Of a stretch of 64,000 nt of DNA, positions 24,120-57,249 are shown piece after piece. Location of the stretch: positions 124,001 through 188,000 of IMG/VR virus record IMGVR_UViG_3300001460_000004. The stretch is one strand, 5' to 3'. The position numbers and the translations under genes are program-made. Under the pieces are notes generated by a model. That model did no database searches. It worked only from the letters and a program-made list of their open reading frames with translations, and was not told the origin of the DNA. Position 1 is the first letter of the stretch. Every line of letters begins with the position of its first letter.

Positions 24120-24770
24120 ATGCTAACTGAACTGGATTGGCTCTTATATCCAGAAGACTGTGAGGTGCTAATAACGCCTCACAGTCTATCACCATATCTA
24201 ATTGAAAAGAATGGCAGTACTGCACTTCGTTGGTATAGTGAACAAAACAACTGGAAAATTGCTAAAAATCATCAAATATATGATTTAGAAAACATAGATG
24301 TTTTTATACGCCCGCCAAAAGTTAGATATTTAAGTGGACTGTATACCTGGTTGCAATGGCTTAAACGTGATCATAATTTAGACTTAGCAACTGCTGAATG
24401 GTTTGCTAAAGAGTTTAGTTTTTTAAACAGGCACTATCTACCACAGTTCCATTGGTTACTTAACTTGGCACGTTATGTAAACCCTACATGTACTATAAAC
24501 TTTCATAAATTTGAAACGTTTTCTCAACACTTCCCTAATAATCATAACCCACATGGGTTTAAGTATGAAGCTGATTGGGGTCGTAACGTATTACAGCAAC
24601 AAAAAAAACTGGATTTTTGGTTTTATCTTGATGATATATTACGTGAACTTGATGGCAAAAGTTTTAATTGGTATGAATTTAGAAATTATTTTAAATCAAA
24701 CTACAGTGATACATATCACGTGTTAACAAGGACTAGTAGCTCAATTAGTAATGTATTGTCCACGACTTGA
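24120..24770 (+). CDS. Sulfotransferase-like protein
   Basis: IEKNGSTALR and FIRPPKVRYLSG resemble 5'-PSB and 3'-PB motifs; HYLPQ. Confidence 0.55.
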   Translation: MLTELDWLLYPEDCEVLITPHSLSPYLIEKNGSTALRWYSEQNNWKIAKNHQIYDLENIDVFIRPPKVRYLSGLYTWLQWLKRDHNLDLATAEWFAKEFSFLNRHYLPQFHWLLNLARYVNPTCTINFHKFETFSQHFPNNHNPHGFKYEADWGRNVLQQQKKLDFWFYLDDILRELDGKSFNWYEFRNYFKSNYSDTYHVLTRTSSSISNVLSTT

Positions 24771-25737
24771 TCATTTTGCAAGACTAAACAGCAATGGCAC
24801 TATTGGAAAATGTGGTCATATGACAATCCAACATGGATTTAAAAATGTTGAACAAATGCAAAATAGCAAATGGTTGGCTAGAGTAAGAGAAGATTTTTTA
24901 AATCAAACTTGGCCAAAAGAATGTATACGCTGTAGAGATACTGAAGCAGTAACACAACGTAGTATTAGACTTTCTAGTATTGAAAGAGATCGATTATTAT
25001 CAAAATTTGATTCTAACTATTTAATTGTTGGTGGTGTACTTGACAACATATGTAATAGTGCATGTCAAAGCTGTAGCAGTGATCTAAGCACAAAAATTGG
25101 TGCATTGGATGGCAGTAGGATTAAAGTTAATAATGAACATTTACTGGATGCACTACCTTGGGAAAACATCATTGAGTTAGATATAAATGGTGGCGAACCT
25201 ACAGCAAGTCCACGCTATCAAACGTTGCTTGAAAATCCACCGCCAAATGTAAAAATCATTAGGATTAATACTAATTGTAGTAGGCCAATGCGAGCCATTG
25301 AAAAATTACTACAACGACGAATTAAAGTAATTGTAACAGCAAGTTTAGATGGTATAGGCGCAATACACGATTATGTGCGTTGGCCAATTAAATGGAACAA
25401 CTATATAAAAGTTATTAACATATATAAACAATTACGTGATCAATATAGTAATTTAGAACTACAAGCATGGACTACAGTTAGCTCGTTAAACGCAATGGAT
25501 TTACCAAACATAATTAAATATTGTAATACAAACAACATTAATCATGACTGGAGTTTTTTAACATTCCCTTCTGCATTAGATGCTCGATATTATAATAGAC
25601 TAACAGCTAATGTGTCATTAGACACAGTTGCAACATTACAAGACAATACTACACAACTTGATGAGTTTATTACTAAACAAGATAAACTACGAAACATAGC
25701 AATGGAGGACTATTATGAAGATTGCTATCACCGGTGA
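24751..25737 (+). CDS. Radical SAM protein with N-terminal twitch/SPASM-like Cys cluster
   Basis: CNSACQSC, GGEP, SLDG..DYVRWP; N-terminal CP...GKC...ECIRC. Confidence 0.85.
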   Translation: MYCPRLDHFARLNSNGTIGKCGHMTIQHGFKNVEQMQNSKWLARVREDFLNQTWPKECIRCRDTEAVTQRSIRLSSIERDRLLSKFDSNYLIVGGVLDNICNSACQSCSSDLSTKIGALDGSRIKVNNEHLLDALPWENIIELDINGGEPTASPRYQTLLENPPPNVKIIRINTNCSRPMRAIEKLLQRRIKVIVTASLDGIGAIHDYVRWPIKWNNYIKVINIYKQLRDQYSNLELQAWTTVSSLNAMDLPNIIKYCNTNNINHDWSFLTFPSALDARYYNRLTANVSLDTVATLQDNTTQLDEFITKQDKLRNIAMEDYYEDCYHR

Positions 25738-26284
25738 TACTGCTGGGATTGGACTAGCATTAAGTGAAGAATTATCATATCGTGGACATGACATTGTTGG
25801 ATTAAGCAAGCGTAATGGTTATAACATTCGTATTACACCTAAAATAGTTGATTTGATTAAACAGTGTGATATGTTTGTTAACAATGCCCAAGTTGATTTT
25901 GCACAAACACAGTTACTATACGGAGTTTGGAAATGTTGGCAAGAATGCCCTGGTAATATAATTTGGAATATTAGTACAATGCTAACACAATGTCCAAGTA
26001 CTACTGATATAACAGATCTTGATCCAGTTGATATGAATATGTATCGCAATCAAAAACTTGCACTTGAGGATGCACACAACCAATTAAAATTTTTTGGGCA
26101 TGGGCCAAAGATGTGTTTGATTAAACCTGGTAATATACAGACACACTCAGGAAAAACAAATGCATGTAACACCACAGTGTGGGCAAAAACTGTTGTTGAC
26201 ACATATGTAACAGCACATGCACAAGGTATGCATCTTGAAGAAATAAGTATTGGATGGTTAAGCAATAAGGATAACCAAATTTAA
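25715..26284 (+). CDS. Short-chain dehydrogenase/reductase
   Basis: ITGDTAGIG, FVNNA, NIS, YRNQK (YxxxK), IKPG. Confidence 0.85.
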   Translation: MKIAITGDTAGIGLALSEELSYRGHDIVGLSKRNGYNIRITPKIVDLIKQCDMFVNNAQVDFAQTQLLYGVWKCWQECPGNIIWNISTMLTQCPSTTDITDLDPVDMNMYRNQKLALEDAHNQLKFFGHGPKMCLIKPGNIQTHSGKTNACNTTVWAKTVVDTYVTAHAQGMHLEEISIGWLSNKDNQI

Positions 26285-27429
26285 TGGATCCAAAAACTGC
26301 ACTTAAAAATGGTACATTCTGTCCATGTCCGTGGACTGGGTTTATTATGCAAGCTGATGGTAGTATTAAAAACTGTGTTGCATCCCAAGATGAAATTGGC
26401 AACATAAACAAAAATACAATACAAGAAGTGTTGGCTAGTGATCATAACCGAGAAATTAAGACAGCAATGTTAAATGGTATAAAGCACAGTAGTTGTGAAA
26501 CATGCCACATAAAAGAACAAAACAATCCATTGCGTACTAATATTATAAGCAATAGAATATATTATCTTAAAGAATTAGCTAGAGTTCCGTATGATCTTTA
26601 TACTGACGACGATGCGTTTGATCTAAACACAGTTGATCTTAGATGGAGAAACACTTGTAATTTTGCGTGTGTGTATTGTGATCCAATCAGCAGTAGTAAA
26701 TGGGCACAAGAACTCAATCAAAAGATACATATGCAAAATAGCAGTAGGCAAGATTTACTTGACTATGTGTTAGAAAATGCACACAAGTTAAAGAATATTT
26801 ACTTTGCTGGTGGCGAACCTTTAATGATCAAAGAAAATAAACAAGTACTCAAAAAACTTAAACAAGTAAACCCATTGCTAAACATTAGAGTGAACACAAA
26901 TCTAAGTAAAACCAATACTGGTATATTTGAACAGTTGTGTGAATTTAAAAATGTACATTGGATTATAAGTGTTGACTCAATGAGTACTGAATTTGAATAT
27001 ATACGCCATGGTGGTAATTGGGAACAATTTAAACAAAACTTCAAAATTATTACACAATTAGATCACAAAATTAGTTTTAACATGCTTTGGTTGATACTAA
27101 ATGCTCATAGTTTGTTTGATACTATTGATTGGTTAACTGACCAAGGCATGCACAACAATAGTATAGTACTTGGTCCTATTACTGGACCAAGTTATCTAGA
27201 CGTGAGAAATTTGCCAATTGAATTGCAACATTCTTTAGAAGATCGTATTATACAACGGCAAGACACCAACAGCACCTGGTTACTGGAACATGGATATCAA
27301 GTGCTTTTAGATCATTTAAGAAAACCATTTAATGGTAATTTAGAAAATAGTCAACACCGTCTAAGTGAGATGGACAAGCGTCGAAATATTAATCATAGGG
27401 ATATTTTTCCATGGCTATACAAACTGTAA
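26284..27429 (+). CDS. Radical SAM protein with N-terminal twitch/SPASM-like Cys cluster
   Basis: FCPCPW...KNC...CETC; CNFACVYC; AGGEP; SVD..FEYIR. Confidence 0.9.
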   Translation: MDPKTALKNGTFCPCPWTGFIMQADGSIKNCVASQDEIGNINKNTIQEVLASDHNREIKTAMLNGIKHSSCETCHIKEQNNPLRTNIISNRIYYLKELARVPYDLYTDDDAFDLNTVDLRWRNTCNFACVYCDPISSSKWAQELNQKIHMQNSSRQDLLDYVLENAHKLKNIYFAGGEPLMIKENKQVLKKLKQVNPLLNIRVNTNLSKTNTGIFEQLCEFKNVHWIISVDSMSTEFEYIRHGGNWEQFKQNFKIITQLDHKISFNMLWLILNAHSLFDTIDWLTDQGMHNNSIVLGPITGPSYLDVRNLPIELQHSLEDRIIQRQDTNSTWLLEHGYQVLLDHLRKPFNGNLENSQHRLSEMDKRRNINHRDIFPWLYKL

Positions 27430-28286
27430 TTGTTTATCCACCTGGTGGGTTTGGTAGTATGCTTGAAGCAGTATTGCGTAGATATAGTGTGCAATATCAA
27501 AGTTTAAATGAAATTGCACCAGCAGACGACGGTTCATTTCATAATTATTCTCGTGGAGAACATGTGTTTATGGTCAATGACAGTACTAACCAAGTCCAAG
27601 ATCATGTGTATAGTGTAATCTATCCAGGATACAACAAAGATATACCTGTAGCATTTGACATATTAGAGAGCCACAAGACACAAAAAGTTTTTGTAAAGAT
27701 TGGCAATAGCTTTGAAATGATACAGTGTTGGTGTTTGTTTGATCACAAAGATGATCTATTAGATCCTAACAATTTGCTTTATAAAGCAATAAACAATGCA
27801 GAAAACTTATCAAGTTGGGGATGTAGTGATTATAGTGAACTAGAAACTTGGCAAAAACGTGAACATTTAAGTTATGTATTAGATGGCATATTTGAAAAAA
27901 CTTTACTTGCAAGTACTCAAGCTCCTGACAATTGGTTTGTTATTAACTTTTCACAGTTATTGTTATCACCTAGGTATGTAATACGCAGTTTGTTTGATCA
28001 TTACAATCTTGACATGAAAGATGAAGATGACTTCACATCGATGATAAACAACTGGAAGGATGTACAAAGCCCAATTTGTGCAAGAGCTGTGCTAATTACG
28101 GATATAATACATGCAACTTTGGGATTTACTGTACCAGTTGATGTCCCTGAACTTAGCATAATGGAACAAGCAATAATACAACAACAATTAAGACAACATG
28201 GATATGAGATAAAATGTCAAGATTTAAATCATTTTCCAAGAACAACAAGTATATTAAAAGATATAATTTATAGACTTGACAAATAG
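27411..28286 (+). CDS. Hypothetical protein, P-loop/sulfotransferase-like family (paralogue of 38581 and 47907)
   Basis: N-terminal YPPGGFGSML motif shared with FMPGAMGHFL and FPGGAHGNYV. Confidence 0.6.
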   Translation: MAIQTVIVYPPGGFGSMLEAVLRRYSVQYQSLNEIAPADDGSFHNYSRGEHVFMVNDSTNQVQDHVYSVIYPGYNKDIPVAFDILESHKTQKVFVKIGNSFEMIQCWCLFDHKDDLLDPNNLLYKAINNAENLSSWGCSDYSELETWQKREHLSYVLDGIFEKTLLASTQAPDNWFVINFSQLLLSPRYVIRSLFDHYNLDMKDEDDFTSMINNWKDVQSPICARAVLITDIIHATLGFTVPVDVPELSIMEQAIIQQQLRQHGYEIKCQDLNHFPRTTSILKDIIYRLDK

Positions 28287-28336: not shown

Positions 28337-29455
28337 ATGGCAGGTAAACCATTTGACGTAAGTAAATTCCGTAAGGACATTACTAAAAGCATTGACGGAC
28401 TAAGCATTGGCTTTCATGATCCAACTGACTGGATTAGCACAGGCAACTATGCACTAAACTATCTTATTAGTGGCGACTTTAACAGAGGTGTTCCTCTAGG
28501 AAAGGTAACAGTATTTGCAGGTGAAAGCGGTGCTGGTAAATCATATATTTGTAGTGGTAATATTGTTAAGTATGCACAAGAACAAGGCATTTTTGTTGTG
28601 CTAATTGATAGTGAGAACGCACTTGACGAAGCATGGTTACATGCATTGGGAGTCAGCACTGAGGAGGATAAATTACTAAAACTTTCAATGTCAATGATTG
28701 ATGATGTTGCAAAAACTATTAGTACCTTTATGAGTGATTACAAAGCATTACCCGACGGAGAACGCCCTAAAGTGTTGTTTGTTATTGACAGTTTAGGTAT
28801 GTTGTTAACTCCCACAGATGTTGATCAGTTTAACAAAGGTGACATGAAAGGTGATTTAGGTCGTAAACCCAAAGCACTTACTGCACTTGTGCGTAACACA
28901 GTTAACATGATTGGCAGTTACAATGTTGGGCTGGTATGTACTAACCACACATATGCTTCGCAAGATATGTTTGATCCAGACGATAAGATCTCAGGTGGTC
29001 AAGGCTTTGTGTACGCAAGTAGTATTGTTGTTGCGATGAAAAAGATGAAATTAAAAGAAGATGAAGCTGGCAACAAAATTAGTGATGTGCGTGGCATACG
29101 TGCAGGATGTAAAGTTATGAAAACACGTTATGCCAAACCTTTTGAAAGTCTACAAGTAAAGATCCCATATGAAACAGGTATGAACCCCTATAGTGGTCTT
29201 GTTGACATGGCTGAGAAAAGAGGATTGTTAACTAAAGTTGGTAATCGACTACAGTTTAAATCAAACAACGGTGAGGAAGTCTTGCAATTTCGTAAAGCAT
29301 GGGAAAGCAATGCTGATGGGTGTTTAGATAAATTAATGGCACAAGTAAGTTATCTTGATGAAATGGCTGATACTGATAAATTAATTCTTGACAGCGACGA
29401 TGATACATACATGGATGAACTACAACAACAGGAGGCACTGAATGGCGAAGAATGA
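28337..29455 (+). CDS. uvsX: RecA-like recombinase
   Basis: GESGAGKS Walker A, IDSE, VIDSLG, NHTY, SGGQG, KTRYAKP. Confidence 0.92.
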   Translation: MAGKPFDVSKFRKDITKSIDGLSIGFHDPTDWISTGNYALNYLISGDFNRGVPLGKVTVFAGESGAGKSYICSGNIVKYAQEQGIFVVLIDSENALDEAWLHALGVSTEEDKLLKLSMSMIDDVAKTISTFMSDYKALPDGERPKVLFVIDSLGMLLTPTDVDQFNKGDMKGDLGRKPKALTALVRNTVNMIGSYNVGLVCTNHTYASQDMFDPDDKISGGQGFVYASSIVVAMKKMKLKEDEAGNKISDVRGIRAGCKVMKTRYAKPFESLQVKIPYETGMNPYSGLVDMAEKRGLLTKVGNRLQFKSNNGEEVLQFRKAWESNADGCLDKLMAQVSYLDEMADTDKLILDSDDDTYMDELQQQEALNGEE

Positions 29456-30760: not shown

Positions 30761-31490
30761 GGACTTGAGTCATCAGCATTCATTGCAAACCTTAGAAGAA
30801 CTATACCAGTTTGATGATTTTATGATGAGTGTGCGAACATTAGCTGATATGGGTTGCGGAAAAGGCAATGACATTGAATGGTGGGCAACTCGTACTACTC
30901 GGGATGAGCATAAAAAGCTATTAAATATCAAATGTACTGGAGTTGACACTACAGAAAAGTTACTGGTTGCTAATGAATATCCAAACATAAGTTATCAACG
31001 GCAGGACTTTGAAGATCCGTTTAAAAGAAAATTTGATGTAATATGGTGCCACGATGCTTTTCAGTACGCAATAAATCCACTTATTACTTTAAAAAATTGG
31101 AATAAAGCACTCACATCAGACGGGATGCTGGTAATTATTTTACCGCAACAAACTGTTATGGAGTTTAGAAGGCAAGCCTTTGATCAACCGCACGGCGTGT
31201 ATTATAACTGGACACTTATAAGTCTTATACATGCACTTGCTGTTAATGGATTTGATTGCGCCGGCGGATTTTTTAAAAAAGAAAGAGATGATCCTTGGTT
31301 ACATGCTATTGTGTACAAAAGCGAAGTAAAGCCAATGGATCCCCGTACTACTACTTGGTATGATTTAGCCGAAGCAGGGCTTTTACCAAGCACATTGTGT
31401 TCTGGTGTAGAAAAATATGCTAAAGCTAGACAACGTGATTTAATATTACCTTGGTTAGGTGGCTCTTTAATTTCATATAGTGATTACTGA
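30744..31490 (+). CDS. Class I SAM-dependent methyltransferase
   Basis: LADMGCGKG, FDVIWCHDAFQY. Confidence 0.85.
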   Translation: MTFSSADLSHQHSLQTLEELYQFDDFMMSVRTLADMGCGKGNDIEWWATRTTRDEHKKLLNIKCTGVDTTEKLLVANEYPNISYQRQDFEDPFKRKFDVIWCHDAFQYAINPLITLKNWNKALTSDGMLVIILPQQTVMEFRRQAFDQPHGVYYNWTLISLIHALAVNGFDCAGGFFKKERDDPWLHAIVYKSEVKPMDPRTTTWYDLAEAGLLPSTLCSGVEKYAKARQRDLILPWLGGSLISYSDY

Positions 31491-32336
31491 TTTTAATCTA
31501 GAAAGTGGTAATCCGTTAGCAATTTCTTCCACTGTAAATTCACTCCAGGCAATATCGTTGAGCCATTGTTGCCTGTCTGGCAGTAGAGGATTTTCTATAT
31601 CGTATAAAAAATCTATATCGTTAGCCACATCGTAAGCAAGACTATGGGTACTAACAAAAGCAGGAACACCATTGACACAAGAGTGCGTCCCCGGATTTGA
31701 GCTGTAACTGACAGTAGCCCACACATTATTGAAATCCATATCAAAGTCATCATAGGTGCCGTTAACATGTTGTGGTTCCTGTCTGTGTACATTTTTAAGT
31801 CCACGTTCTATATGTTCTAATCTACAACGTGGGTGTGGTCGAAATACAATTGGACGCTGTGTGTATTTACGTATTTCGTCGTATGTTTCTAAGAACCAAT
31901 TGCTCATACGTGGCATATTTTGCCACTGTAAACTCTTATCGTGTTGTCCGCATACTAAAATAAAATCCCCGTTGGATCTCCAAGGTTTACAAACCAGTCC
32001 CAAGCTAACAGCCCTAGACCTATCATTGTCTTGCTCACCAAAGTAAGCATCTCTGTTAATTCCATTTAGTCCTACTTTCCATGTTGTTCCGCGTTTGATA
32101 CTACCAACTTCGAGGACAATAACTGGTTTCCGAAGTTTTTGACAATGGGCCCAAATATCTTTGTTACGAGCCATTCTACCGTGAAACAAAACGCTCCAAA
32201 TAACATGAACATCGGAATCGTTAATATTATCACTGTTACCAATGTGGTGCCCATTAGCAATACAACTATGCTCAAAAGCATCAAAAATAGATTTTGCATT
32301 TAGTGCTCCATACTTTCTCCAGAGCTTGAATTTCAT
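31473..32336 (-). CDS. KpsS/KpsC-like capsular polysaccharide (GT-B) protein
   Basis: LVCGQHDKS, FRPHP, SSNPG..S..NGVPAF, RQQWL. Confidence 0.6.
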   Translation of the reverse strand: MKFKLWRKYGALNAKSIFDAFEHSCIANGHHIGNSDNINDSDVHVIWSVLFHGRMARNKDIWAHCQKLRKPVIVLEVGSIKRGTTWKVGLNGINRDAYFGEQDNDRSRAVSLGLVCKPWRSNGDFILVCGQHDKSLQWQNMPRMSNWFLETYDEIRKYTQRPIVFRPHPRCRLEHIERGLKNVHRQEPQHVNGTYDDFDMDFNNVWATVSYSSNPGTHSCVNGVPAFVSTHSLAYDVANDIDFLYDIENPLLPDRQQWLNDIAWSEFTVEEIANGLPLSRLKSVITI

Positions 32337-33205
32337 TATGAATTCCAGTACGCCTCTGGTCGATTGACCATTATATCTTTAGCCAAACTTTTACCTGTAT
32401 CCTTACGGGCACCTTTCATATGATCAAGCCATTTGCCAAGTGCACCATTAATTAAGGGATGCCCTCCCCCGCCTGATTTTGCTTCTTTTAAATACATCTC
32501 AGCACTGTAATCGTGTGCAGTTGGAAAGTCTGCTTTCATTTTATTAAGTATATGACCAAATACATAACTGTCATGCCATTCTTCTAATGTGAAAATACCA
32601 TGTTCAGCATCTTCATACATACGTTCAAACTCTTTAAGGAACTCGTGGCACACTGGATGATTTAGATTTAATCCATAAAATCCACACTCAGGCCAAGTCT
32701 GTGATCCTTTTCCTCTACCTACATATGTAATCCAGGCATTGTCTGGTAATTGTTCTGCAAACTGTTCATAACTCCATTCACTGTGTACAAATGTATCTGC
32801 ATCCATCCATATACACCAGTCTTTAGAGCGTGTACAAGCGTCATACACAGCATATGTCTTGTTAGCAAAGCGTATAGCATCCCATTTAAATGTTTTTTGC
32901 CAATCTTTACGACTGCGTTGCGGTTCATTACTAATATCACCGTTTGCTTTAGGTATATTACACCAACGTTCTTTAAATGCATTTAATTTTGGTAATGCTT
33001 GTTTTGCATTAATTATTTCTATTTGGCCAGGATTAGGGTTGTCAGGCATACAATCTTCTACATATACTAATAGTTTAATACGTTTGTCTACTTGTTGTAC
33101 AAAACTATTTAAAAAACGCTGTCCGTACTTTCTCATTCCATCTGGATGAAATGTTGTTAATACTGTTATATTTTTCTTCATATATATTTCCTCATGTGAC
33201 GCCAT
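32336..33205 (-). CDS. GT-A glycosyltransferase-like protein (start probably 33181)
   Basis: RFANK, WMDADT (DxD), ECGF, WHDSYVF, HMKG. Confidence 0.7.
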   Translation of the reverse strand: MASHEEIYMKKNITVLTTFHPDGMRKYGQRFLNSFVQQVDKRIKLLVYVEDCMPDNPNPGQIEIINAKQALPKLNAFKERWCNIPKANGDISNEPQRSRKDWQKTFKWDAIRFANKTYAVYDACTRSKDWCIWMDADTFVHSEWSYEQFAEQLPDNAWITYVGRGKGSQTWPECGFYGLNLNHPVCHEFLKEFERMYEDAEHGIFTLEEWHDSYVFGHILNKMKADFPTAHDYSAEMYLKEAKSGGGGHPLINGALGKWLDHMKGARKDTGKSLAKDIMVNRPEAYWNS

Positions 33206-34092
33206 GCCTCGCCGCTGCGTAGTTCTTCAAAGCTCCAGTGAAACATACTAATACGTTCTAACCATGCTTGTCTGTCAAACTCAATTGGATTTTCAATTCT
33301 ACTAAAATCGTTATGTGCAACTTCTTTGCACTGGCTTTTAATTGGGTCAGTTACAAATGCATGAAAACCTTGTATGATAGGACCAACTATACTGCTACTG
33401 TTATGATTAACAACAGCCCATGCTTTGTGTAAGTCTTGTTCAAGTGGAGTATCAAACGGGCTTATAGTAGTGTTATGCAAATTGTTTACTCGGCAGTTTT
33501 TTCCAGTCAGATACTCTTTGGCCCTTTTATCCCCTGGATGAGCTCGTATTACGATAAGACGGTCTGTGTGAACTCTAATTTTTCTTACAGTTTCAATTAT
33601 CCAATCTTGTATATTAATTCCATCCATGCTCCAACCACCATTGCGTTGACAGCAGAGTATTATATATTTTCCTCTAGTTTTATAAGGTAGTAATTCAATT
33701 TGGGTTTCGCGTTGTATTTTCTTCCATCGATGTCGGTGCGGATTATCATCAAAGTATATTCCAGTAGTTGGAAAAATACCATCAATGCTGTATCGTAAAT
33801 ACCCCCATGGATTTGCTGAATTTGAATACAGGAATAAGTTTGCATCGGCACATAAAGTTCTTGCATTGCACTCAATTACTCGTCGGCGCAAATCTAAGTG
33901 AGGAGTATGAGTTTGCTCATACACCCAACCTTGTATCATATTTAAGTCACTTGGGATAACATCAAATCCATCATGAATAATTCCTTGATCGCCACATGCA
34001 CAGACTCCTGTGATAAAATCTTGAAGGAGTTGTATTTTTTGAGGTTTATTATTTCTACCTGGAACTGATTTTAAATAGCTAACTACTTTCAT
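33178..34092 (-). CDS. KpsS/KpsC-like capsular polysaccharide (GT-B) protein
   Basis: LCCQR, IRAHP, VNHNSS, RQAWL; paralogous to 31473-32336. Confidence 0.6.
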   Translation of the reverse strand: MKVVSYLKSVPGRNNKPQKIQLLQDFITGVCACGDQGIIHDGFDVIPSDLNMIQGWVYEQTHTPHLDLRRRVIECNARTLCADANLFLYSNSANPWGYLRYSIDGIFPTTGIYFDDNPHRHRWKKIQRETQIELLPYKTRGKYIILCCQRNGGWSMDGINIQDWIIETVRKIRVHTDRLIVIRAHPGDKRAKEYLTGKNCRVNNLHNTTISPFDTPLEQDLHKAWAVVNHNSSSIVGPIIQGFHAFVTDPIKSQCKEVAHNDFSRIENPIEFDRQAWLERISMFHWSFEELRSGEAWRHMRKYI

Positions 34093-35803
34093 TTAGCATT
34101 TCCCATGCAAATCCTGACAACATTTCTTGAGGTGTAAATTGACAATAACTCAAATGTGCTGCAAATTCAATAACATCTTGTTTTTGTGGAATATATAAAT
34201 CATTTAAATCAGATATTTTTGTGTTACACAATGCACTGGCAGAATTAGCAGCAAGAGCAATAGCTGGTACTCCATGTAACATTGCTTCTGTTGCAGCAAT
34301 ACTATTATATGTTATTAACACATATGCTTTATCTAATGCATCCCATATAGTGTCAGAACTAATACGCTCGGTTCTAGTAGGTTTATCTCTCATATTAATA
34401 GGACGATCGGTGAATTTTCTAATTTCCTTTACAGTATTATACATCCACTTGTCGGGATCCTCCCCGTAAAATTTCATTACTTTCCCACTGGGTGGACAAA
34501 TTAATATTTCATCACCTCGTTTTTTCTTTTCAGGAAAGTGATATCCTATCTTGTTTAACCTATCGTGCGGCCGCTTTCTTATTTCACTTAAATTTTGCAT
34601 ACCGTTTTTAGTAATACGGTGATACGTTTTATGTTTAAAATTACCAAGATACCCAGTATCTAAATAATAAAAAGTTCTTCCATTTGCTATACAGTCTTTG
34701 ATTGCTTCCTGGCACTTTCCACTGAGACCTCGGATCAATAACGGAGTAGTTGATTTCTTTTCTCGATTGTAACTTGATATTCTGCCATTAGAGCCTTTAA
34801 CAAAATTAACACATATAGGATCGTATTTTAATCCTCTTTCCTCATAAGGTGCATCGCTTTCAATTGAAACACATCTTATTGTTTTACTATCTGGGTGTCG
34901 CATTTGATCTAGCTCCTTGTTATCAAAATATCTATCTTTTGGGTCTATGAGTCTTTCAAAACTTTTTTTTAAATATGCTCGGGCTTCAAGACTAAAAGGT
35001 AAATGATCGATTGGCTCTTCTTTACCTTCCCAGTACGGTGCTTTTAATTTTTCTTGAGTGTCAAATAATTGTTGGTGCAAACACCTTCTCTCAACTTTAT
35101 AGTATTCATTGGCATATTCACAATCTTCATGTTCTTTAAACCATGGGCCGCCTTCTGTGTAATGCAACGCTTTGGGTGTGCCGTGAACACCTTCATGGTA
35201 CCAACCTACTAACCAATTCCATTCGTGTGAAAACTCTCCTAAGTATCTATCAGTAATCCAGCTAAATCGATGCAAATACTTCCCAGTCTGTTGATTTACT
35301 ACTTTTGCTGTAACAAACTTGTTCTTTACATGTCCACAATTGATTAGCATACAACTGCTCCAATTTTTACGTGGATACAAGTGTTGGGCTTGTCCGTCCA
35401 TTTTAGTAGACTCAGTTGGAGTGTAGTCATGATGGGCACACATTATTGCATATTTGTCATCACGCTCATTAAATAATTTCCTAACATCATCCAAGAAAAC
35501 AAAGTCGCAATCAACAAACAATGCCCAACCTTTAAAATTACACAACTCGGGTATTAAAAATCGGGTAAACGTAAATTCAGTACTGCTAAGTGTATCAATT
35601 TCTCGGGTATACAATCCTGCCCCACGTAGATTTTTCTGTTTAAGGGGTACAATTTTAACTGGACCAGTAGCATGATCAAGTATACTTTGCTTGCATACTC
35701 GATAGGCAATATCTTCGCGGCTATCCCAACCTACAAATACATGCAGGGTTTCTAATTCTTCGTTTATGTTATCACCATCCAAAGATATAATCCTTCCTAA
35801 CAT
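34079..35803 (-). CDS. Fusion: GT8-like GT-A glycosyltransferase + KpsS-like domain
   Basis: FVGWDSRE, STEFTFTRF, FVDCDF, YPRKNWSS, HYTEGGPW; C-terminal LDTGY...NSIAATEAMLHGVP. Confidence 0.75.
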   Translation of the reverse strand: MLGRIISLDGDNINEELETLHVFVGWDSREDIAYRVCKQSILDHATGPVKIVPLKQKNLRGAGLYTREIDTLSSTEFTFTRFLIPELCNFKGWALFVDCDFVFLDDVRKLFNERDDKYAIMCAHHDYTPTESTKMDGQAQHLYPRKNWSSCMLINCGHVKNKFVTAKVVNQQTGKYLHRFSWITDRYLGEFSHEWNWLVGWYHEGVHGTPKALHYTEGGPWFKEHEDCEYANEYYKVERRCLHQQLFDTQEKLKAPYWEGKEEPIDHLPFSLEARAYLKKSFERLIDPKDRYFDNKELDQMRHPDSKTIRCVSIESDAPYEERGLKYDPICVNFVKGSNGRISSYNREKKSTTPLLIRGLSGKCQEAIKDCIANGRTFYYLDTGYLGNFKHKTYHRITKNGMQNLSEIRKRPHDRLNKIGYHFPEKKKRGDEILICPPSGKVMKFYGEDPDKWMYNTVKEIRKFTDRPINMRDKPTRTERISSDTIWDALDKAYVLITYNSIAATEAMLHGVPAIALAANSASALCNTKISDLNDLYIPQKQDVIEFAAHLSYCQFTPQEMLSGFAWEMLNESS

Positions 35804-40223: not shown

Positions 40224-40234
40224 TATACCAAAAT

Positions 40235-40259: not shown

Positions 40260-40285
40260 CTTGACTTTTTTTCCAATTCCTTATT

Positions 40286-52588: not shown

Positions 52589-53977
52589 ATGCTTAAAGAA
52601 TACAATCTCGATGTACAGAAATTGTTTTTAGAAATGATGTTAGAAGATGCACAAAGTTATGTGCGTATTCAAAACATATTCAATCCAGAAAACTTTGATC
52701 GAAGCTTGATCGAAGTAGCTAAGTTCATTAAAGATCATTGTGATGATTACAAAACAATGCCAGAGATAGCTCAGATAAACTCCAGCACTGGCGTGACACT
52801 AAGTCCAGTACCTGATCTCAACAGTGGACACTTTGAATGGTTTATGACCGAGTTTGAAAACTTTACTAAAAGACAAGAACTTGAACGAGCAATACTAAAA
52901 GCTGCAGACTTATTAGAAAAAGGTACGTATGAGCCAGTTGAAAAACTTATCAAAGATGCAGTACAAATAAGTTTGACACGTGATTTAGGAATAAATTATT
53001 TTGATGATCCACGTGCCAGGCTAACTGCTTTAAAAAACAACAATGGTCAAAACAGCACAGGCTGGAAAGCACTTGATAAAATGTTGTATGGTGGGTTTAA
53101 CAGAGGCGAACTACAAATATTTGCAGGCGGATCGGGCTCGGGCAAGAGTTTGGTTATGCAAAATTTAGCAGTTAACTGGATACAAGCAGGACTCAATGGT
53201 GTGTACATTACACTAGAATTAAGTGAAGGCTTAACTGCAATGCGTGTTGATAGCATGTTAACGGGCACCAGTAGCAAAGACATTTTTCGAGAGTTAGATA
53301 ATGTTGAAATGAAAATTAAAATGGCTGGCAAAGCAAGTGGGCAACTACAAGTCAAGTACATGCCAGCACAAAGCAATGTAAATGACATTAGGGCGTATTT
53401 AAAAGAATTAGAAATACAAAGTGGTTACAAAACAGACTTTTTGTTAGTTGACTATCTAGACTTATTGATGCCGGTTAGTGCAAAAGTTAGCCCAAATGAT
53501 CAATTTATTAAAGACAAGTATGTAAGCGAAGAACTACGCAATTTAGCAAAAGAGTTAAATGTATTGTTTGTAACAGCATCGCAATTAAATCGTAGTGCAG
53601 TTGAAGAAATTGAATTCGACCACAGTCATATTGCTGGTGGTATTAGTAAAATTAATACAGCAGATAATGTGTTTGGTATATTTACTAGCAGGGCAATGCG
53701 TGAACGTGGGCGATATCAGATACAAGCAATGAAAACACGTAGTAGTAGTGGAGTTGGACAAAAAATTGATTTAGATTTTGATATAGCTAGTTTAAGAATT
53801 ATGGATTGCGATGAAGATGCACAGCAAAGCAGTAGCGGGCATGGTAACATATACGAAAGCATTAAAGCAACAACAAATGTTAACGACACAAGTAGTCCAG
53901 TTACCGAAACTCGAAAAGTTGAAGCAGATGTGCAAAGTAGTAAACTTAAAGGCTTGCTAGCATCAATGAAATCATGA
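52589..53977 (+). CDS. Replicative DnaB-like helicase (gp41-like)
   Basis: GGSGSGKS, TLEL, VDYLDL, TASQLNR, TADNV, KTR. Confidence 0.92.
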   Translation: MLKEYNLDVQKLFLEMMLEDAQSYVRIQNIFNPENFDRSLIEVAKFIKDHCDDYKTMPEIAQINSSTGVTLSPVPDLNSGHFEWFMTEFENFTKRQELERAILKAADLLEKGTYEPVEKLIKDAVQISLTRDLGINYFDDPRARLTALKNNNGQNSTGWKALDKMLYGGFNRGELQIFAGGSGSGKSLVMQNLAVNWIQAGLNGVYITLELSEGLTAMRVDSMLTGTSSKDIFRELDNVEMKIKMAGKASGQLQVKYMPAQSNVNDIRAYLKELEIQSGYKTDFLLVDYLDLLMPVSAKVSPNDQFIKDKYVSEELRNLAKELNVLFVTASQLNRSAVEEIEFDHSHIAGGISKINTADNVFGIFTSRAMRERGRYQIQAMKTRSSSGVGQKIDLDFDIASLRIMDCDEDAQQSSSGHGNIYESIKATTNVNDTSSPVTETRKVEADVQSSKLKGLLASMKS

Positions 53978-54831
53978 TATTACCTAAGTTAGTTATTCCC
54001 AGTAGAATTAATCAACATTGGATAGAGAGTGGAATGGACTCGTACGATCTCTGTGTTGACAAAAAACATTTTAAAAAATACCCACACACTGTAAAATATT
54101 ATTACAACAGCCGTGGTTTTCGTGACCGTGAATGGCCTAACTCAGTAGATGATTGCATATGGTGTGTTGGTGATAGTTTTACAGTAGGGTTAGGGGTACC
54201 ACATGAACACAGCTGGAGTTATATACTAGGGGAACGTTTGAATAAACGCACAATAAATGTTAGCATGGATGGTGCTAGCAACACATGGATACGCAGGCAA
54301 GCTGTACAAATACTAGAACTACAACCCAAGTTACTAATACTACAATGGAGTTACATCACTAGACGAGAAGCAACTATGGATCAATTGTGGCAAAAGTTCT
54401 ACGATAGTGTGAGAGATCCAAGTTGGCCAGAATGTAAAACCTATGCACAAATTTCAGAGTTACCCGAGTGGATAAGAACTGAACTTGAAACAGTGCATAA
54501 CTGTAGCAATGTTATGGAAAACATCGACGATACTAATAAGCGTCTACGTTATACTCATACCAGCGACGAACAAGACAAAGAACATTTATACGATCAAATT
54601 ACACAAGTTGAAAGTGCAGTAGATTCAACTTTATTAATACATAGTTTTGTGCCTCATTTTAGTCCAAATGGATATGCTGTTCCCATTCCTAAAAGTATAC
54701 AACCAAGACATATACCTGAAATAACTAAATTAGATCTTGCTCGGGACGGTCATCACTATGATCGGTTAACTGCTGAACATTTTGTTGATCAGTTGGAGAA
54801 TTTAATAACTGAGAACAGTGCCATTTCCTAA
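53974..54831 (+). CDS. SGNH-like protein with an inserted DPxWP module
   Basis: YNSRGFRD, VGDSFTVG, NVSMDGASN, RDGHH; FYDSVRDPSWPEC insertion. Confidence 0.7.
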   Translation: MILPKLVIPSRINQHWIESGMDSYDLCVDKKHFKKYPHTVKYYYNSRGFRDREWPNSVDDCIWCVGDSFTVGLGVPHEHSWSYILGERLNKRTINVSMDGASNTWIRRQAVQILELQPKLLILQWSYITRREATMDQLWQKFYDSVRDPSWPECKTYAQISELPEWIRTELETVHNCSNVMENIDDTNKRLRYTHTSDEQDKEHLYDQITQVESAVDSTLLIHSFVPHFSPNGYAVPIPKSIQPRHIPEITKLDLARDGHHYDRLTAEHFVDQLENLITENSAIS

Positions 54832-55936
54832 GTTCTTCGGATTCTTTTACAGCACTATCATCGCTGTTGTATGGCTTACCTATCCCGTTTTCTGCAACCC
54901 ATTCGTTATACCAACCAGCAACTTCATCAAAGTTTTTAATCATTAATTTTTTTTCAGCCATAGTTTGTAATTTTATAGGCATTCCGGTTACTAATGCACC
55001 ACGATCGGTTAGCTCTTTGATTGCTAGAAAACTTTTGGTGTATGCTTTGCTATTGTTTAACAAGTACTGTTGATCAGTATTGCTTAAACTTTGAATAATA
55101 CCATTACGAGTGCTAGTATCATCTGGCACACTTAATTGAAAGTTTGGTTTGTTACTTTTATCTTCTAACAGCAATGTTGGTTCTACTTGTTTACTAAGTC
55201 CACTTATATCTCCCAGCAAGTAATGACATCGATTCCAGTCTTCAAATTCAATGCCAAATATATCATTCCAGTTACGTTTTTCTTGATGATTAAAGCAAGG
55301 TAATTCTAAACAAAATTCTTCAGCTCGAGGCATGTCTTGCTCGTAAACAAAGTAACTACCAACAGTAAAATATTGATCTACCCACTCTAAGTATTTTGCA
55401 TAGTCTTGAAGATATTTTATTAAACTCATGCGAGGAACTTTAATTTTTATACTGTAAAGGTCTTCGTAGTAATCTGCTTTATCTAATGGGTTGTAAACAT
55501 TAAGTTTGTCACTGCGGGTTACAATAACCCAACTTAGTGCATGTTCAAACAAATTTTCTCTTTGGGCACTAATAATATAAAAATGTTCATTTAGATATTT
55601 GTAAAATTCAACTTGTTGTGCAATTGGGTCATTGCGATTGCGAATATGATATTGTGCTAATCTGCTAGTTTTATAATGATCTACACTGCTTAGTAAATCT
55701 GTTATTTCGCTAAGTGTTTGATGATATCCTCTAGGTTGGTCAATTCTTTCTGGCTTTCCAAGAATTTCACTATTGTATTCTGGGCTAAAGTATCGTATAA
55801 TACCATTAGTAAGTTCGTGTAAGTTTATTACTGGACGATCGTATTTGTGTGCATTCATTAAAATAGTCAGTAATCTTTGCAAAAAAGTACTGCCAACTCG
55901 ATCTGGAGTTAATATTAATACATTGTTATGGTTCAT
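54725..55936 (-). CDS. Sulfotransferase-like (Stf0-like) protein
   Basis: LTPDRVGSTFL, LHE, RENLFEHALS, YE. Confidence 0.55.
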   Translation of the reverse strand: MNHNNVLILTPDRVGSTFLQRLLTILMNAHKYDRPVINLHELTNGIIRYFSPEYNSEILGKPERIDQPRGYHQTLSEITDLLSSVDHYKTSRLAQYHIRNRNDPIAQQVEFYKYLNEHFYIISAQRENLFEHALSWVIVTRSDKLNVYNPLDKADYYEDLYSIKIKVPRMSLIKYLQDYAKYLEWVDQYFTVGSYFVYEQDMPRAEEFCLELPCFNHQEKRNWNDIFGIEFEDWNRCHYLLGDISGLSKQVEPTLLLEDKSNKPNFQLSVPDDTSTRNGIIQSLSNTDQQYLLNNSKAYTKSFLAIKELTDRGALVTGMPIKLQTMAEKKLMIKNFDEVAGWYNEWVAENGIGKPYNSDDSAVKESEELRKWHCSQLLNSPTDQQNVQQLTDHSDDRPEQDLI

Positions 55937-55986
55937 GATAATATTTATAACTACCCTAACTGCCCCAGGCTATAAGTAACACTGCA

Positions 55987-57249
55987 ATGAGCAAACTATT
56001 CCCTGGAAAAGAAATATTCCCTGTTAACTCGCCAACTGCTTGTATGTTAAAATGGAGTTGGAGTACAATAAACCTGCAGGATGCATACACTAGTAGTTGT
56101 CACCGGGTAGAAGGTGAATATTTTGATATTGAACAATTTGATAATTTTCATAACTTACCTGAGAAAATCCTTGCAAGAGAAAAAATGCAACAAGGTATTT
56201 GGCCAGGCAAAGGATGCGAGTATTGCGAACGTGTTGAATGTGCCGGCGGCATCAGTGACAGGACAATGACACTAGAAAGGCAACACACCCGAGATAAAAT
56301 ACCACCTGAGTTGCATGACAACCCCAATGCCACACATGTAACACCTACAATACTCGAAGTGTACTTTAATAATACGTGTAATATGAGTTGTGTGTATTGT
56401 GCACCAAGTGTAAGTAGTCAAATAAATGCAGAAGTTACAAAGAATGGTGGTTTCAGTGTAGGTAACATGCATGTTGAACCTTTTGTTACTAACAACACAA
56501 GGCAAAAACTATTAGTAGAAAAACTTTGGAAGTATCTAAGTACTAACAATCGATATCAACACATACGGCACTTTAATATATTGGGTGGTGAACCATTATT
56601 ACAACAAGAGTTTGATCAGTGCATACAATTTTGGAATGACCATCCCAATCCTAGTTTAACTATTAATTTAGTGAGCAATTTAAACTTTGATCCTAAATTT
56701 TTTAAAAACAGAATAAACCAACTGCGCCAGTTAGTTGATGAATATAAAATATTTCAAGTTGAAATTACTGCAAGTTTAGATTGTTTAGGACCAGAGCAAG
56801 AATATGTTCGCCGTGGACTAAAACTACAAGACTATTGGGTACCAAACTTTGAATTTTTATTACAACAAGATTGGATCAAACCCAGTGTACACAGTTGTAT
56901 AAGTAGTCTCACAATTAAAACATTTGATCAATTAGTCAACAAACTTAACAGTTGGAACCACCAATACAATACTACAATAGATCATTCGTTTGATGTAGTA
57001 GTGGGGAAAAGTTGGCAAGAAATTGCTATGCATCCTATGTTTTTTGGACCTGGCGTATTTGACGAAGATTTTGATCGAATAATTCAAGCTATGCCACAAG
57101 GACACAGTCGACAACACATGCAAGGAATTGCTGATAGTATTCAAGCCGCCCAACGTGATGAAGTTAAAATAAACCAGTTAAAACAGTATTTACGGATACT
57201 AGACACTAGAAGAAATACAGATTATACAGAATTATTTCCTTGGCTTTAG
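55987..57249 (+). CDS. Radical SAM protein with N-terminal twitch/SPASM-like Cys cluster
   Basis: CMLKW...SCH...GCEYC; CNMSCVYC; GGEP; SLD..QEYVR. Confidence 0.9.
   Translation: MSKLFPGKEIFPVNSPTACMLKWSWSTINLQDAYTSSCHRVEGEYFDIEQFDNFHNLPEKILAREKMQQGIWPGKGCEYCERVECAGGISDRTMTLERQHTRDKIPPELHDNPNATHVTPTILEVYFNNTCNMSCVYCAPSVSSQINAEVTKNGGFSVGNMHVEPFVTNNTRQKLLVEKLWKYLSTNNRYQHIRHFNILGGEPLLQQEFDQCIQFWNDHPNPSLTINLVSNLNFDPKFFKNRINQLRQLVDEYKIFQVEITASLDCLGPEQEYVRRGLKLQDYWVPNFEFLLQQDWIKPSVHSCISSLTIKTFDQLVNKLNSWNHQYNTTIDHSFDVVVGKSWQEIAMHPMFFGPGVFDEDFDRIIQAMPQGHSRQHMQGIADSIQAAQRDEVKINQLKQYLRILDTRRNTDYTELFPWL

What the first reader, a model, noticed from the sequence alone, without database searches (positions are those of the whole stretch)
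24751..57249. Four paralogous radical SAM enzymes with reversed domain order
Seen: 24751, 26284, 41792 and 55987 share an N-terminal Cys cluster (CP/C..W...C...C..C), then CxxxCxxC, GGEP, S.D....Y.R and a C-terminal D..R tail (ending FP.L/M in three of four). Established: SPASM/twitch auxiliary-cluster domains normally lie C-terminal to the radical SAM barrel. Two copies flank an SDR and sit beside sulfotransferase-like genes. Inference: a phage-expanded family, perhaps sugar oxidation/epimerisation (BtrN-like) paired with the reductase.
Basis: partly seen in the sequence, partly recalled or inferred. Interest (0 to 1): 0.6.

Follow-up and report, generated by a model that had tools for sequence, protein, structure and literature searches.

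The report
Phage-expanded N-terminal-twitch radical SAM enzymes
The four genes are real members of a catalogued but never characterised radical SAM family whose extra iron-sulfur domain sits in front of the catalytic barrel; this marine jumbo phage carries twelve of them, most likely to tailor sugars for a phage-made glycan.

Summary
All four ORFs are intact and share four N-terminal Cys, CxxxCxxC, GGEP, S.D....Y.R and a D..R tail. The reversed domain order is real: the N-terminal domain's only significant match in the PDB is the C-terminal twitch domain of BtrN, with all four cluster ligands aligned. It is not new as an architecture. NCBIfam already curates it as NF033640 (N_Twi_rSAM); three copies pass its cut-off and one is divergent.

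The scale is the news. The 230-kb marine T4-like jumbo-phage record holds 12 copies, its largest paralogue family, at 16-33% pairwise identity. Related phage records of 275-347 kb, two of them complete, hold 7-18. Bdellovibrionota chromosomes hold arrays of up to 11 radical SAM genes, and phage and bacterial copies interleave in the tree.

The phage also encodes IscU, an A-type Fe-S carrier and an MTA/SAH nucleosidase homologue. Genes nearby or elsewhere in the record include NodU/CmcH carbamoyltransferase, amidinotransferase, DegT aminotransferase, a small SDR and FkbM methyltransferases, with leads to capsule-synthesis-like and glycosyltransferase-like genes.

Best reading, p about 0.5: a battery of twitch-type radical enzymes tailoring amino-sugars or glycans. 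No member has been characterised. Peptide and nucleic-acid substrates remain possible.

The parts
24751..25737 (+). N_Twi_rSAM paralogue 1 (328 aa). Divergent and on a long branch, with all Cys motifs intact and no FP tail.
   Evidence: NF033640 130.5 bits, below the cut-off of 170; end branch 1.75.
26284..27429 (+). N_Twi_rSAM paralogue 2 (381 aa).
   Evidence: 255.6 bits; SPASM at residues 13-75, Radical_SAM at 123-284; clade with G000 82583 and copies of G001 and G002, support 99.
41792..42937 (+). N_Twi_rSAM paralogue 3 (381 aa). More than 900 homologues; the best 120 listed are about 51-63% identical. In relatives the gene lies directly upstream of the UvsW-like helicase.
   Evidence: 294.5 bits; AF2 pLDDT 88.6.
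55987..57249 (+). N_Twi_rSAM paralogue 4 (420 aa).
   Evidence: 191.2 bits; clade with two G001 copies, support 100; 43% identity.
25715..26284 (+). Compact SDR-like oxidoreductase (189 aa) between paralogues 1 and 2. Its ends overlap or abut both.
   Evidence: adh_short E 0.006; FabG-like phrog E 5e-4; TGxxxGIG, NNAQ, YRNQK and PGNIQT motifs read in the sequence.
24120..24770 (+). 216-aa ORF of no known family, overlapping the start of paralogue 1. Same tight gene string.
   Evidence: no hit.
27411..28286 (+). 291-aa ORF of no known family, overlapping the end of paralogue 2. Its N-terminal PPGGFGS loop may be nucleotide-binding.
   Evidence: no hit; motif by eye only.
42955..43737 (+). 260-aa ORF inserted between paralogue 3 and the UvsW-like helicase. 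The N-terminus looks SGNH-like by eye only; the ORF is absent at this place in relatives.
   Evidence: no hit; relatives have the rSAM overlapping the helicase gene.
53974..54831 (+). GDSL/SGNH-like acylhydrolase (285 aa) near paralogue 4.
   Evidence: Lipase_GDSL_2 E 1.6e-4, below the gathering score; GDS block read.
54725..55936 (-). 403-aa ORF divergent from paralogue 4. The 'sulfotransferase-like' label is only a weak lead.
   Evidence: Sulfotransfer_1 E 0.036, residues 5-62; no PHROG.
31473..35803 (-). Three paralogous ORFs (287, 304 and 574 aa, with a 289-aa ORF between them). A protein-language lead points to the capsule-polysaccharide synthesis family (KpsC/KpsS type).
   Evidence: paralogue cluster; Atlas 0.97-0.98; PF05159 in 18% of one cluster. 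No Pfam hit.
35772..37806 (-). Two FkbM-type methyltransferases and a cytidylyltransferase fused to a mannose-6-phosphate-isomerase-type cupin.
   Evidence: Methyltransf_21 E 5e-11 and 4e-13; MannoseP_isomer E 2e-22; CTP_transf_like E 9e-12.
63676..63999 (+). A-type Fe-S cluster carrier. The ORF runs off the window end.
   Evidence: (PF01521, E 1.7e-11 at G000 187679-187969).
23142..24116 (+). gp32-like single-strand DNA-binding protein, first gene of the string that holds paralogues 1 and 2 (context).
   Evidence: phrog_1192, E 4e-57.
28337..29455 (+). UvsX/RecA-like recombinase just after that string (context).
   Evidence: RecA E 4e-14.
43734..45200 (+). UvsW-like ResIII/DEAD helicase, the conserved neighbour of paralogue 3 in related phages (context).

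Best explanation
What they are. The four genes are members of the N-terminal-twitch radical SAM family (NCBIfam NF033640). Each protein should bind two [4Fe-4S] clusters. One sits on CxxxCxxC in a partial TIM barrel and cleaves SAM to the 5'-deoxyadenosyl radical. The other sits on four Cys of an N-terminal twitch domain homologous to that of BtrN and, by analogy, takes an electron from the substrate radical.

Setting. They are 4 of 12 old, divergent paralogues in a marine T4-like jumbo myovirus. Related phages carry 7-18. The phage also brings IscU, an A-type Fe-S carrier and an MTA/SAH nucleosidase homologue; that enzyme type also removes the inhibitory by-product 5'-deoxyadenosine (established knowledge).

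Inferred function. Each paralogue performs a different radical tailoring step on amino-sugar or glycan precursors, such as carbinol oxidation to a ketone. Epimerisation would follow with the SDR, amination with the DegT aminotransferase, or deoxygenation. The products would be passed to carbamoyl-, amidino-, methyl- and glycosyl-transferases encoded in the same islands.

Shown: family membership, domain homology, Cys conservation, the expansion and the gene associations. Inferred: cluster binding, the chemistry, and the substrate class.
For: Identity.
- NF033640 is the best hit for all four, and over the cut-off for three.
- A profile of the N-terminal domain hits only BtrN's twitch domain in the PDB, at E 2.2e-4 with all four ligand Cys aligned.
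- BtrN is also the top structural match of the domain model, though weakly: Foldseek E 0.28, VIA Z 3.3.
- The Cys and the GGE, S and R motifs are essentially invariant in 83 sequences.
- The AF2 model (pLDDT 88.6) has a radical SAM core with Z about 12 to viperin, anSME, BlsE and DesII.

Expansion.
- 12 copies in the record, its largest paralogue family.
- 7-18 copies in five related phage records of 275-347 kb, two of them complete with terminal repeats.

Sugar and small-molecule context.
- The SDR lies between copies 1 and 2.
- The window holds FkbM methyltransferases, a cytidylyltransferase-cupin and a lead to capsule-synthesis-like genes.
- A five-rSAM array lies near a carbamoyltransferase, an amidinotransferase homologue (E 1e-9 to HsvA and AGAT), a DegT aminotransferase and a kinase.
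- The core of that array is syntenic in two other phages.
- A NodU/CmcH carbamoyltransferase homologue lies within 6-8 kb of a family member in 22 of 80 viral loci. The same holds for 10 of 78 bacterial loci from several phyla.
- Bdellovibrionota arrays sit beside GT2, PMT_2 and GT1/28 genes and a methyltransferase.

Support genes. MTA/SAH nucleosidase homologue, A-type carrier and IscU.

Literature. Marine T4-like genomes with 12 radical SAM genes plus Fe-S assembly genes (PMC5332604). Radical SAM cassettes in LPS-gene-rich islands of pelagimyophages (PMC7029224). An aminotransferase, amidinotransferase and rSAM cluster in a cyanomyovirus (PMC12801897).
Against: - Full-text searches found no paper on this family and none describing a characterised member.
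- The immediate neighbours of the four window copies are replication genes or ORFs of no family.
- Orthologues of copy 3 are fixed next to the UvsW-like helicase with no sugar gene beside them.
- One Bdellovibrionota array lies among housekeeping genes with no glycosyltransferase nearby.
- The glycosyltransferase-10, capsule-synthesis and sulfotransferase labels are only leads.
- Structural matches of the barrel do not separate sugar, peptide and nucleotide enzymes.
- No 2-deoxy-scyllo-inosose synthase family was found in the 230 kb held.
- No phage flavodoxin or ferredoxin was found in the 230 kb held.
Confidence: 0.5

Rival explanations
1. They are peptide or protein maturases, like most SPASM/twitch enzymes. 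They would cross-link, epimerise or oxidise residues in phage structural proteins, host proteins or unrecognised precursor peptides.
For: - The top Foldseek matches of the whole model are anSME, SkfB and CteB.
- Secondary NCBIfam hits include PapB, the mycofactocin maturase, HxsB and SkfB.
- An Asp/Arg beta-hydroxylase-like gene lies in the window.
Against: - These matches cover only the common barrel, at Z 10-12, no better than viperin or DesII.
- The genes in the arrays overlap end to end, leaving no room for precursor ORFs.
- No RRE-type leader-binding domain is present; the N-terminus is the twitch domain.
- The recurrent partners are carbamoyltransferases and transferase-like genes, not proteases or transporters.
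Confidence: 0.15
2. They modify nucleotides or DNA, either as hypermodification of phage DNA or by making altered nucleotides. They would be expressed with the replication genes among which they lie.
For: - The copies sit between gp32 and UvsX, beside the UvsW-like helicase, near DnaB, and between the gp46- and gp47-like genes.
- Orthologues of copy 3 overlap the UvsW-like helicase gene in relatives.
- Weak similarity to viperin, MoaA and QueE.
- A sigma-70-like site lies upstream of gp32 (consensus only).
Against: - The viperin and pVip scores are 18-44 bits over part of the barrel, against 130-295 bits for NF033640.
- No thymidylate-synthase or hydroxymethylase family was found in the 230 kb held.
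- Gaps between core genes are the usual insertion sites for accessory genes in T4-like phages (established knowledge; also PMC7029224).
- 7-12 copies also sit in Bdellovibrionota chromosomes.
Confidence: 0.12
3. They tailor a lipid or another envelope small molecule rather than a sugar.
For: - An array in Bacteriovoracaceae lies beside PMT_2-like and GT2 membrane enzymes and an FAD oxidoreductase.
- The lipid-joining radical SAM enzyme GDGT-MAS is among the structural matches, at Z 10.2.
Against: - No acyl- or lipid-synthesis genes were seen beside the phage copies.
- The GDGT-MAS match is no better than dozens of others.
- The amino-, amidino- and carbamoyl-transferases point to polar substrates.
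Confidence: 0.07

Closest known systems
NCBIfam NF033640 (N_Twi_rSAM, 'twitch domain-containing radical SAM protein')
   Same: Full-length matches covering about positions 1-398 of the model. The N-terminal four-Cys domain is followed by CxxxCxxC. Three of the four copies score over the curated cut-off.
   Different: Copy 1 scores below the cut-off (130.5 against 170 bits). The family name describes an architecture, not a function. No paper on it turned up in full-text searches.
BtrN (butirosin 2-deoxy-scyllo-inosamine dehydrogenase), the archetypal twitch enzyme, PDB 4M7S/4M7T
   Same: The twitch domain is homologous: E 2.2e-4, with the four cluster-ligand Cys aligned at almost the same spacing. 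BtrN is the top structural match of the domain model. A single, fully Cys-ligated auxiliary cluster is expected.
   Different: In BtrN the domain follows the barrel (residues 165-243 of 269); here it precedes it. The barrels are not specifically related. No 2-deoxy-scyllo-inosose synthase was found in the phage. The substrate is unknown.
SPASM enzymes (anSME, SkfB, CteB, SuiB, PqqE)
   Same: Same branch of the radical SAM superfamily. Pfam SPASM hits the N-terminal domain. anSME is the top Foldseek match of the whole model.
   Different: SPASM domains are C-terminal and bind two clusters with a seven-Cys motif. Here only four Cys are conserved in the domain, so one cluster is expected.
Radical SAM gene sets noted in marine T4-like phage genomes (PMC5332604, PMC7029224, PMC12801897)
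   Same: Many radical SAM genes occur per genome together with phage Fe-S assembly genes. Cassettes lie in LPS-gene-rich variable islands. One cluster combines an rSAM with an amidinotransferase and a sugar aminotransferase.
   Different: The passages read do not name the subfamily, its reversed architecture or its link to Bdellovibrionota. Their genomes are 180-250 kb cyano- or pelagimyophage types. By its DnaB helicase this phage is nearest the PA5oct and Atu_ph07 jumbo phages, at 48% identity.
Radical SAM enzymes with other N-terminal auxiliary-cluster domains (MiaB/RimO, LipA); from general knowledge, not tested here
   Same: A second cluster is bound ahead of the barrel.
   Different: Those domains have different folds and Cys patterns, and their clusters donate sulfur. 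They are not twitch or SPASM homologues.

Membership tests
NF033640 N_Twi_rSAM | Whole-protein score at or above the curated cut-off (170 bits) | tested here: met
   255.6, 294.5 and 191.2 bits for copies 2-4. Copy 1 gives 130.5 bits (not met), although NF033640 is still its best hit by 100 bits.
NF033640 N_Twi_rSAM | Twitch-type four-Cys domain at the N-terminus, ahead of CxxxCxxC | tested here: met
   Pfam SPASM hits residues 4-75. The profile hits BtrN's twitch domain at E 2.2e-4. The Cys are conserved in 81-83 of 83 sequences.
Radical SAM superfamily (PF04055) | CxxxCxxC cluster motif, GGE SAM-binding motif and a partial TIM barrel | tested here: met
   The motifs are present in 83 of 83 sequences. 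The model aligns over about 200 residues to solved radical SAM cores at Z about 12.
Radical SAM superfamily (PF04055) | Reductive cleavage of SAM; two bound [4Fe-4S] clusters | not testable with these tools
   Needs anaerobic reconstitution, Fe/S counts, EPR and a 5'-deoxyadenosine assay.
SPASM (two auxiliary clusters) | Seven-Cys motif CX9-15GX4C ... CX2CX5CX3C ... C | tested here: not met
   Only C, C and CxxC are conserved, and no Cys follows the CxxC in the domain. This is a twitch domain, not a SPASM domain.
BtrN-type sugar/cyclitol dehydrogenase | Twitch domain C-terminal to the barrel; orthology to BtrN over the whole length | tested here: not met
   only the twitch domain matches, and it lies at the opposite end. 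No BtrN-specific family is among the NCBIfam hits listed (only the best 25 of 43 are shown for copy 2).
BtrN-type sugar/cyclitol dehydrogenase | Oxidation of a secondary alcohol of an amino-sugar or cyclitol | not testable with these tools
   Suggested only by context (SDR, DegT, amidinotransferase).
Prokaryotic viperin (pVip) | Full-length match to the pVip models | tested here: not met
   18-44 bits, over only the first part of the barrel; viperin_w_prok at most 41.6 bits against a cut-off of 180.

The most novel reading that the evidence does not exclude
The 7-18 paralogues per genome would form an assembly line for a densely decorated sugar polymer or small molecule of unknown structure. 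They would work with the co-conserved carbamoyl-, amidino-, amino-, methyl- and glycosyl-transferase-like genes. N-terminal-twitch enzymes would then be a new functional class of carbohydrate radical enzymes. The toolkit would be shared by gene exchange between marine jumbo myoviruses and predatory Bdellovibrionota, and some of these phages might even infect Bdellovibrionota.
Probability: 0.25. Interest if true: 0.75.

Novelty: new member of a known kind. Interest (0 to 1): 0.5.

Why it matters
A family of about 8,000 sequence clusters has no characterised member found here. It takes up about 6% of some jumbo-phage genomes (rough estimate) and forms the longest radical SAM gene arrays seen in this work. 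Finding its chemistry would probably add new radical reactions. It would also explain why oxygen-sensitive Fe-S enzymes, together with their own assembly factors, are kept by phages found in marine, brine and seawater metagenomes. It could reveal a phage-made glycan or metabolite that affects host recognition or superinfection. As given, however, the finding (four paralogues with a reversed domain order) falls within an already curated family.

Tried and rejected
Searches that gave nothing.
- Megablast of 20 kb against cultured phages: no hit.
- tblastn with copy 3 against cultured phages: only three weak Vibrio-phage hits.
- Pfam and PHROGs gave nothing for ORFs 24120, 27411, 42955 and 54725(-), or for the array ORFs of 354, 378 and 307 aa.
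- The 378-aa family has 2,493 homologues, all unnamed and without Pfam. Its profile hits nothing in the PDB, so 'glycosyltransferase 10' stays an Atlas lead at score 0.80.
- No flavodoxin, plant-type ferredoxin, thymidylate-synthase/hydroxymethylase or DHQ-synthase family in the 230 kb held. The record is only about 66% complete, so absence is not shown.
- The T4 late-promoter word TATAAATA occurs 4 times against 10 expected, and never upstream of an rSAM gene. Sigma-70-like sites are not above chance.
- No tRNA in the window.
- Literature searches for the family name, 'N-terminal SPASM', and Bdellovibrio with radical SAM found no paper on this family.

Rejected readings.
- Viperin-like or defence enzymes.
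- Recent duplication: paralogue identities are only 16-33%.

Not done.

Compliance. Only genetic code 11 was used. 
Full report
1. The observation.
Each has an N-terminal Cys set (a first Cys usually followed by PW, a second Cys after a Gly, then CxxC), followed by CxxxCxxC, GGEP, S.D(G)....Y.R and a C-terminal D..R. The tail ends in FP.L/M in three of the four. This is not chance. All four have the same best NCBIfam hit, NF033640 'N_Twi_rSAM, twitch domain-containing radical SAM protein', at 130.5, 255.6, 294.5 and 191.2 bits against a cut-off of 170; the next family scores below 50 bits. Pfam places SPASM at the N-terminus and Radical_SAM after it.

2. Is the domain order really reversed?
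Yes. A profile of the N-terminal 85-125 residues of the 12 paralogues and some orthologues (A2) was searched against all PDB sequences. Its only significant match is the C-terminal twitch domain of BtrN (4M7S residues 165-243 of 269, E 2.2e-4), with all four cluster-ligand Cys aligned at nearly the same spacing.

An AlphaFold model of the domain alone (pLDDT 82) has BtrN's twitch domain as top match in two independent structure searches, followed by the SPASM domain of SuiB. Both scores are weak: Foldseek E 0.28 with TM 0.55, and VIA Z 3.3 over 81 residues.

The whole-protein model (pLDDT 88.6) has an ordinary radical SAM core. It matches viperin, anSME, BlsE, CteB, DesII and MoaA about equally, at Z 11-12 over roughly residues 100-340. 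The barrel therefore says nothing about the substrate.

In 83 family members from four phage and four bacterial genomes, the four N-terminal Cys are present in 81, 82, 83 and 83 sequences, and CxxxCxxC, GGE, Ser227 and Arg239 in 82-83. No further Cys is conserved in the domain. It is a twitch domain (one extra cluster), not a SPASM domain (two).

The window is bases 124001-188000 of a 230,036-bp IMG/VR virus record that CheckV rates 66% complete. The record is a myovirus with T4-type genes:
- Gp23-family capsid protein;
- tail sheath, tail tube and large terminase;
- gp32-like SSB, UvsX-like and UvsW-like proteins, Toprim primase, DnaB-like helicase and gp46/47-like proteins.

Its helicase is nearest those of the jumbo phages PA5oct, Atu_ph07 and Phosso, at about 48% identity. 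Its DNA occurs in marine, brine and seawater metagenomes from several studies.

The whole record holds 12 full-length family members. Five lie in one array at 40-48 kb, two flank the gp47-like gene, one lies at 7.5 kb, and four are in the window. This is the largest paralogue family of the genome. Pairwise identities are only 16-33%, so the copies are old.

Five related phage records of 275-347 kb, two of them complete with terminal repeats, carry 7, 7, 14, 16 and 18 matches. A maximum-likelihood tree shows that the five-gene array has one-to-one orthologues in the same order in two of those phages. Window copies 2 and 4 also have orthologues there. Copy 3 has more than 900 homologues. The best 120 listed are about 51-63% identical, some on contigs of 225-352 kb. 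In two relatives the gene overlaps the start of the UvsW-like helicase gene; in this phage a 260-aa ORF has been inserted between them.

A profile search of 1.84 billion representatives finds 8,285 clusters at E up to 1e-30. These include proteins of about 800-1,200 aa with two or three full matches.

4. The bacterial side.
In one genome per species of GTDB, the best matches are overwhelmingly Bdellovibrionota: Bdellovibrionales, Bacteriovoracaceae, Halobacteriovorax and Oligoflexia. Four Bdellovibrionota genomes of 2.3-3.0 Mb (three filed as single chromosomes) hold 7-12 matches each. In an even sample of 41 genomes of that phylum, 11 carry the family, with 1-9 copies. None of the 14 control model genomes passes the cut-off.

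The arrays are chromosomal. They are flanked by RNase PH, ribosomal protein L25, PRPP synthetase, EF-G and SAH hydrolase genes. One Bacteriovoracaceae locus has 11 radical SAM genes in a row beside three GT2 genes, a PMT_2-like gene and an FAD oxidoreductase.

In the tree, phage and bacterial copies interleave at no fewer than four strongly supported places. One phage copy is 61-62% identical to Bdellovibrionota copies, which is as close as phage-to-phage orthologues. Genes of this family have therefore moved between the two pools. The direction of transfer and the host relation are not shown.

5. What travels with the genes.
In the window:
- Copies 1 and 2 lie in a string of overlapping or abutting genes downstream of the gp32-like gene: a 216-aa ORF, copy 1, a 189-aa SDR, copy 2, then a 291-aa ORF, with the UvsX-like gene following.
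- The SDR scores weakly by HMM (E 0.006) but shows the TGxxxGIG, NNAQ, YxxxK and PGxxxT motifs.
- Between 31.4 and 37.8 kb on the minus strand lie three paralogues with a strong Atlas lead to capsule-polysaccharide synthesis proteins, two FkbM methyltransferases and a cytidylyltransferase-cupin.
- A GDSL-like gene and a weakly sulfotransferase-like gene lie beside copy 4.

Around the five-gene array lie several further genes:
- a NodU/CmcH carbamoyltransferase (E 1e-47) and a zeta/AAA_33-type P-loop kinase;
- an MTA/SAH nucleosidase homologue (E 6e-9);
- an amidinotransferase homologue (E 1e-9 to 1e-6 to HsvA, AGAT, StrB1 and SxtG; three paralogues in the genome);
- a DegT/DnrJ/EryC1 aminotransferase further off at 29.3 kb;
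- a 378-aa family with four paralogues and a weak lead to glycosyltransferase family 10.

The core of the array is syntenic in two other phages at 37-68% identity. It runs: 354-aa ORF, four rSAM genes, the 378-aa gene, one rSAM gene, 307-aa ORF.

Within 6-8 kb of a family member, a carbamoyltransferase homologue is found in 22 of 80 viral loci. It is also found in 10 of 78 bacterial loci from Bdellovibrionota, Bacteroidota, Myxococcota and an actinobacterial MAG.

The phage also encodes IscU (E 3e-52) and an A-type Fe-S carrier, the latter at the end of the window.

6. How it most likely works.
Shown: family membership, homology of the N-terminal domain to a twitch domain, conservation of both Cys sets, the expansion and the gene associations.

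From established knowledge of radical SAM and twitch enzymes (BtrN, anSME): the CxxxCxxC cluster cleaves SAM, the 5'-deoxyadenosyl radical abstracts a substrate hydrogen, and a fully Cys-ligated auxiliary cluster can accept the electron in an oxidation.

Inferred: each paralogue performs one such step on an amino-sugar or glycan precursor. The keto or radical products would be handled by the SDR, the aminotransferase, and the amidino-, carbamoyl-, methyl- and glycosyl-transferases. The phage would supply Fe-S assembly factors and a nucleosidase to keep many such enzymes active. I put this at about 0.5.

Rivals are peptide or protein maturation (0.15), nucleotide or DNA modification suggested by the position among replication genes (0.12), and lipid tailoring (0.07).

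7. Comparison with what is known, and novelty.
The architecture is already curated as NF033640. Multi-copy radical SAM genes with Fe-S assembly genes in marine T4-like genomes have been noted in passing (PMC5332604). So have radical SAM cassettes in LPS-gene-rich islands of pelagimyophages (PMC7029224). A cluster of aminotransferase, amidinotransferase and rSAM has been described in a cyanomyovirus (PMC12801897).

I found no paper on this family or its function. The four genes are therefore new members of a known kind. Four points may be new:
- the phage expansions belong to this particular subfamily;
- their size in related jumbo-phage records (7-18 matches);
- the conserved array and its partners;
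- the parallel, exchanging expansion in Bdellovibrionota.

8. Limits.
No experiment exists for any member. Several neighbour labels are leads only. The record is incomplete. Model coordinates could not be read, so the spatial relation of the two clusters is untested.

Noticed in passing
G000 87755-88783 (+) = L003:12755-13783, and G000 227714-228625 (+): The same phage also has two radical SAM genes of the usual order (Radical_SAM first, weak SPASM at the C-terminus). One lies directly after the gp46-like gene. Both domain orders therefore coexist in one genome.
   Followed up: partly
window 63676-63999 (+), and G000 222846-223214 (+): Phage-encoded A-type Fe-S carrier (PF01521, E 2e-11) and IscU (PF01592, E 3e-52). 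This matches the Fe-S assembly genes reported in marine T4-like environmental genomes.
   Followed up: partly
L002:5317-5883 (-) = G000 38317-38883: 188-aa MTA/SAH nucleosidase homologue that matches chain positions ~50-203 of the ~233-aa enzymes, so the usual N-terminal part appears to be missing. It lies between the carbamoyltransferase and the rSAM array, and could remove 5'-deoxyadenosine.
   Followed up: partly
L199 (Bacteriovoracaceae chromosome OZ242254.1, 1407729-1429120): Eleven Radical_SAM genes in a row, both N-twitch and other types, beside three GT2 genes, a PMT_2-like gene and an FAD oxidoreductase. This is the longest radical SAM array seen in this work.
   Followed up: partly
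L088, L091, L097 (PBLX01 contigs of 'Legionellales MAG SP228', each about 42 kb): This MAG has 12 family matches on short contigs. One is 49% identical to window copy 3, and a carbamoyltransferase is 49% identical to the phage's. These contigs look like misbinned jumbo-phage DNA.
   Followed up: partly
L007 (Vibrio phage K566, OZ196521.1, 161-179 kb): A cultured 255-kb Vibrio phage has five family matches (two over the cut-off), annotated only as 'radical SAM domain-containing' or hypothetical. It is a possible experimental system. PA5oct and Atu_ph07 have none.
   Followed up: yes
proteins P0244-P0259 and others: Many of the best-scoring relatives are 750-1,400 aa long, with two or three full-length matches to the family profile. 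These are either tandem fusions of N-twitch rSAM modules or merged gene calls.
   Followed up: no
window 31473-35803 (-): Three paralogous ORFs with no Pfam hit but an Atlas lead of 0.97-0.98 to viral 'capsule polysaccharide biosynthesis' clusters. They lie upstream of two FkbM methyltransferases and a cytidylyltransferase-cupin, and look like a phage glycan island.
   Followed up: partly
window 42955-43737 (+) compared with L201, L202 and L203: In relatives the copy-3 orthologue overlaps the UvsW-like helicase gene. Here a 260-aa ORF of no family has been inserted between them.
   Followed up: partly
window 55942-55949 (-): A T4 late-promoter-like TATAAATA lies immediately upstream of the 403-aa minus-strand ORF that diverges from copy 4. 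The word is rarer in the window than chance expects (4 against 10), so this is a consensus match only.
   Followed up: no
G000 (13 N in the record); ORFs at 84798-85934 and 40125-41456: A few ambiguous bases give X residues in two of the paralogues outside the window. None falls in the four window genes.
   Followed up: no
window 57541-59454 (+): 637-aa protein with a full DUF6267 match (E 1e-43) directly after copy 4. Function unknown.
   Followed up: no
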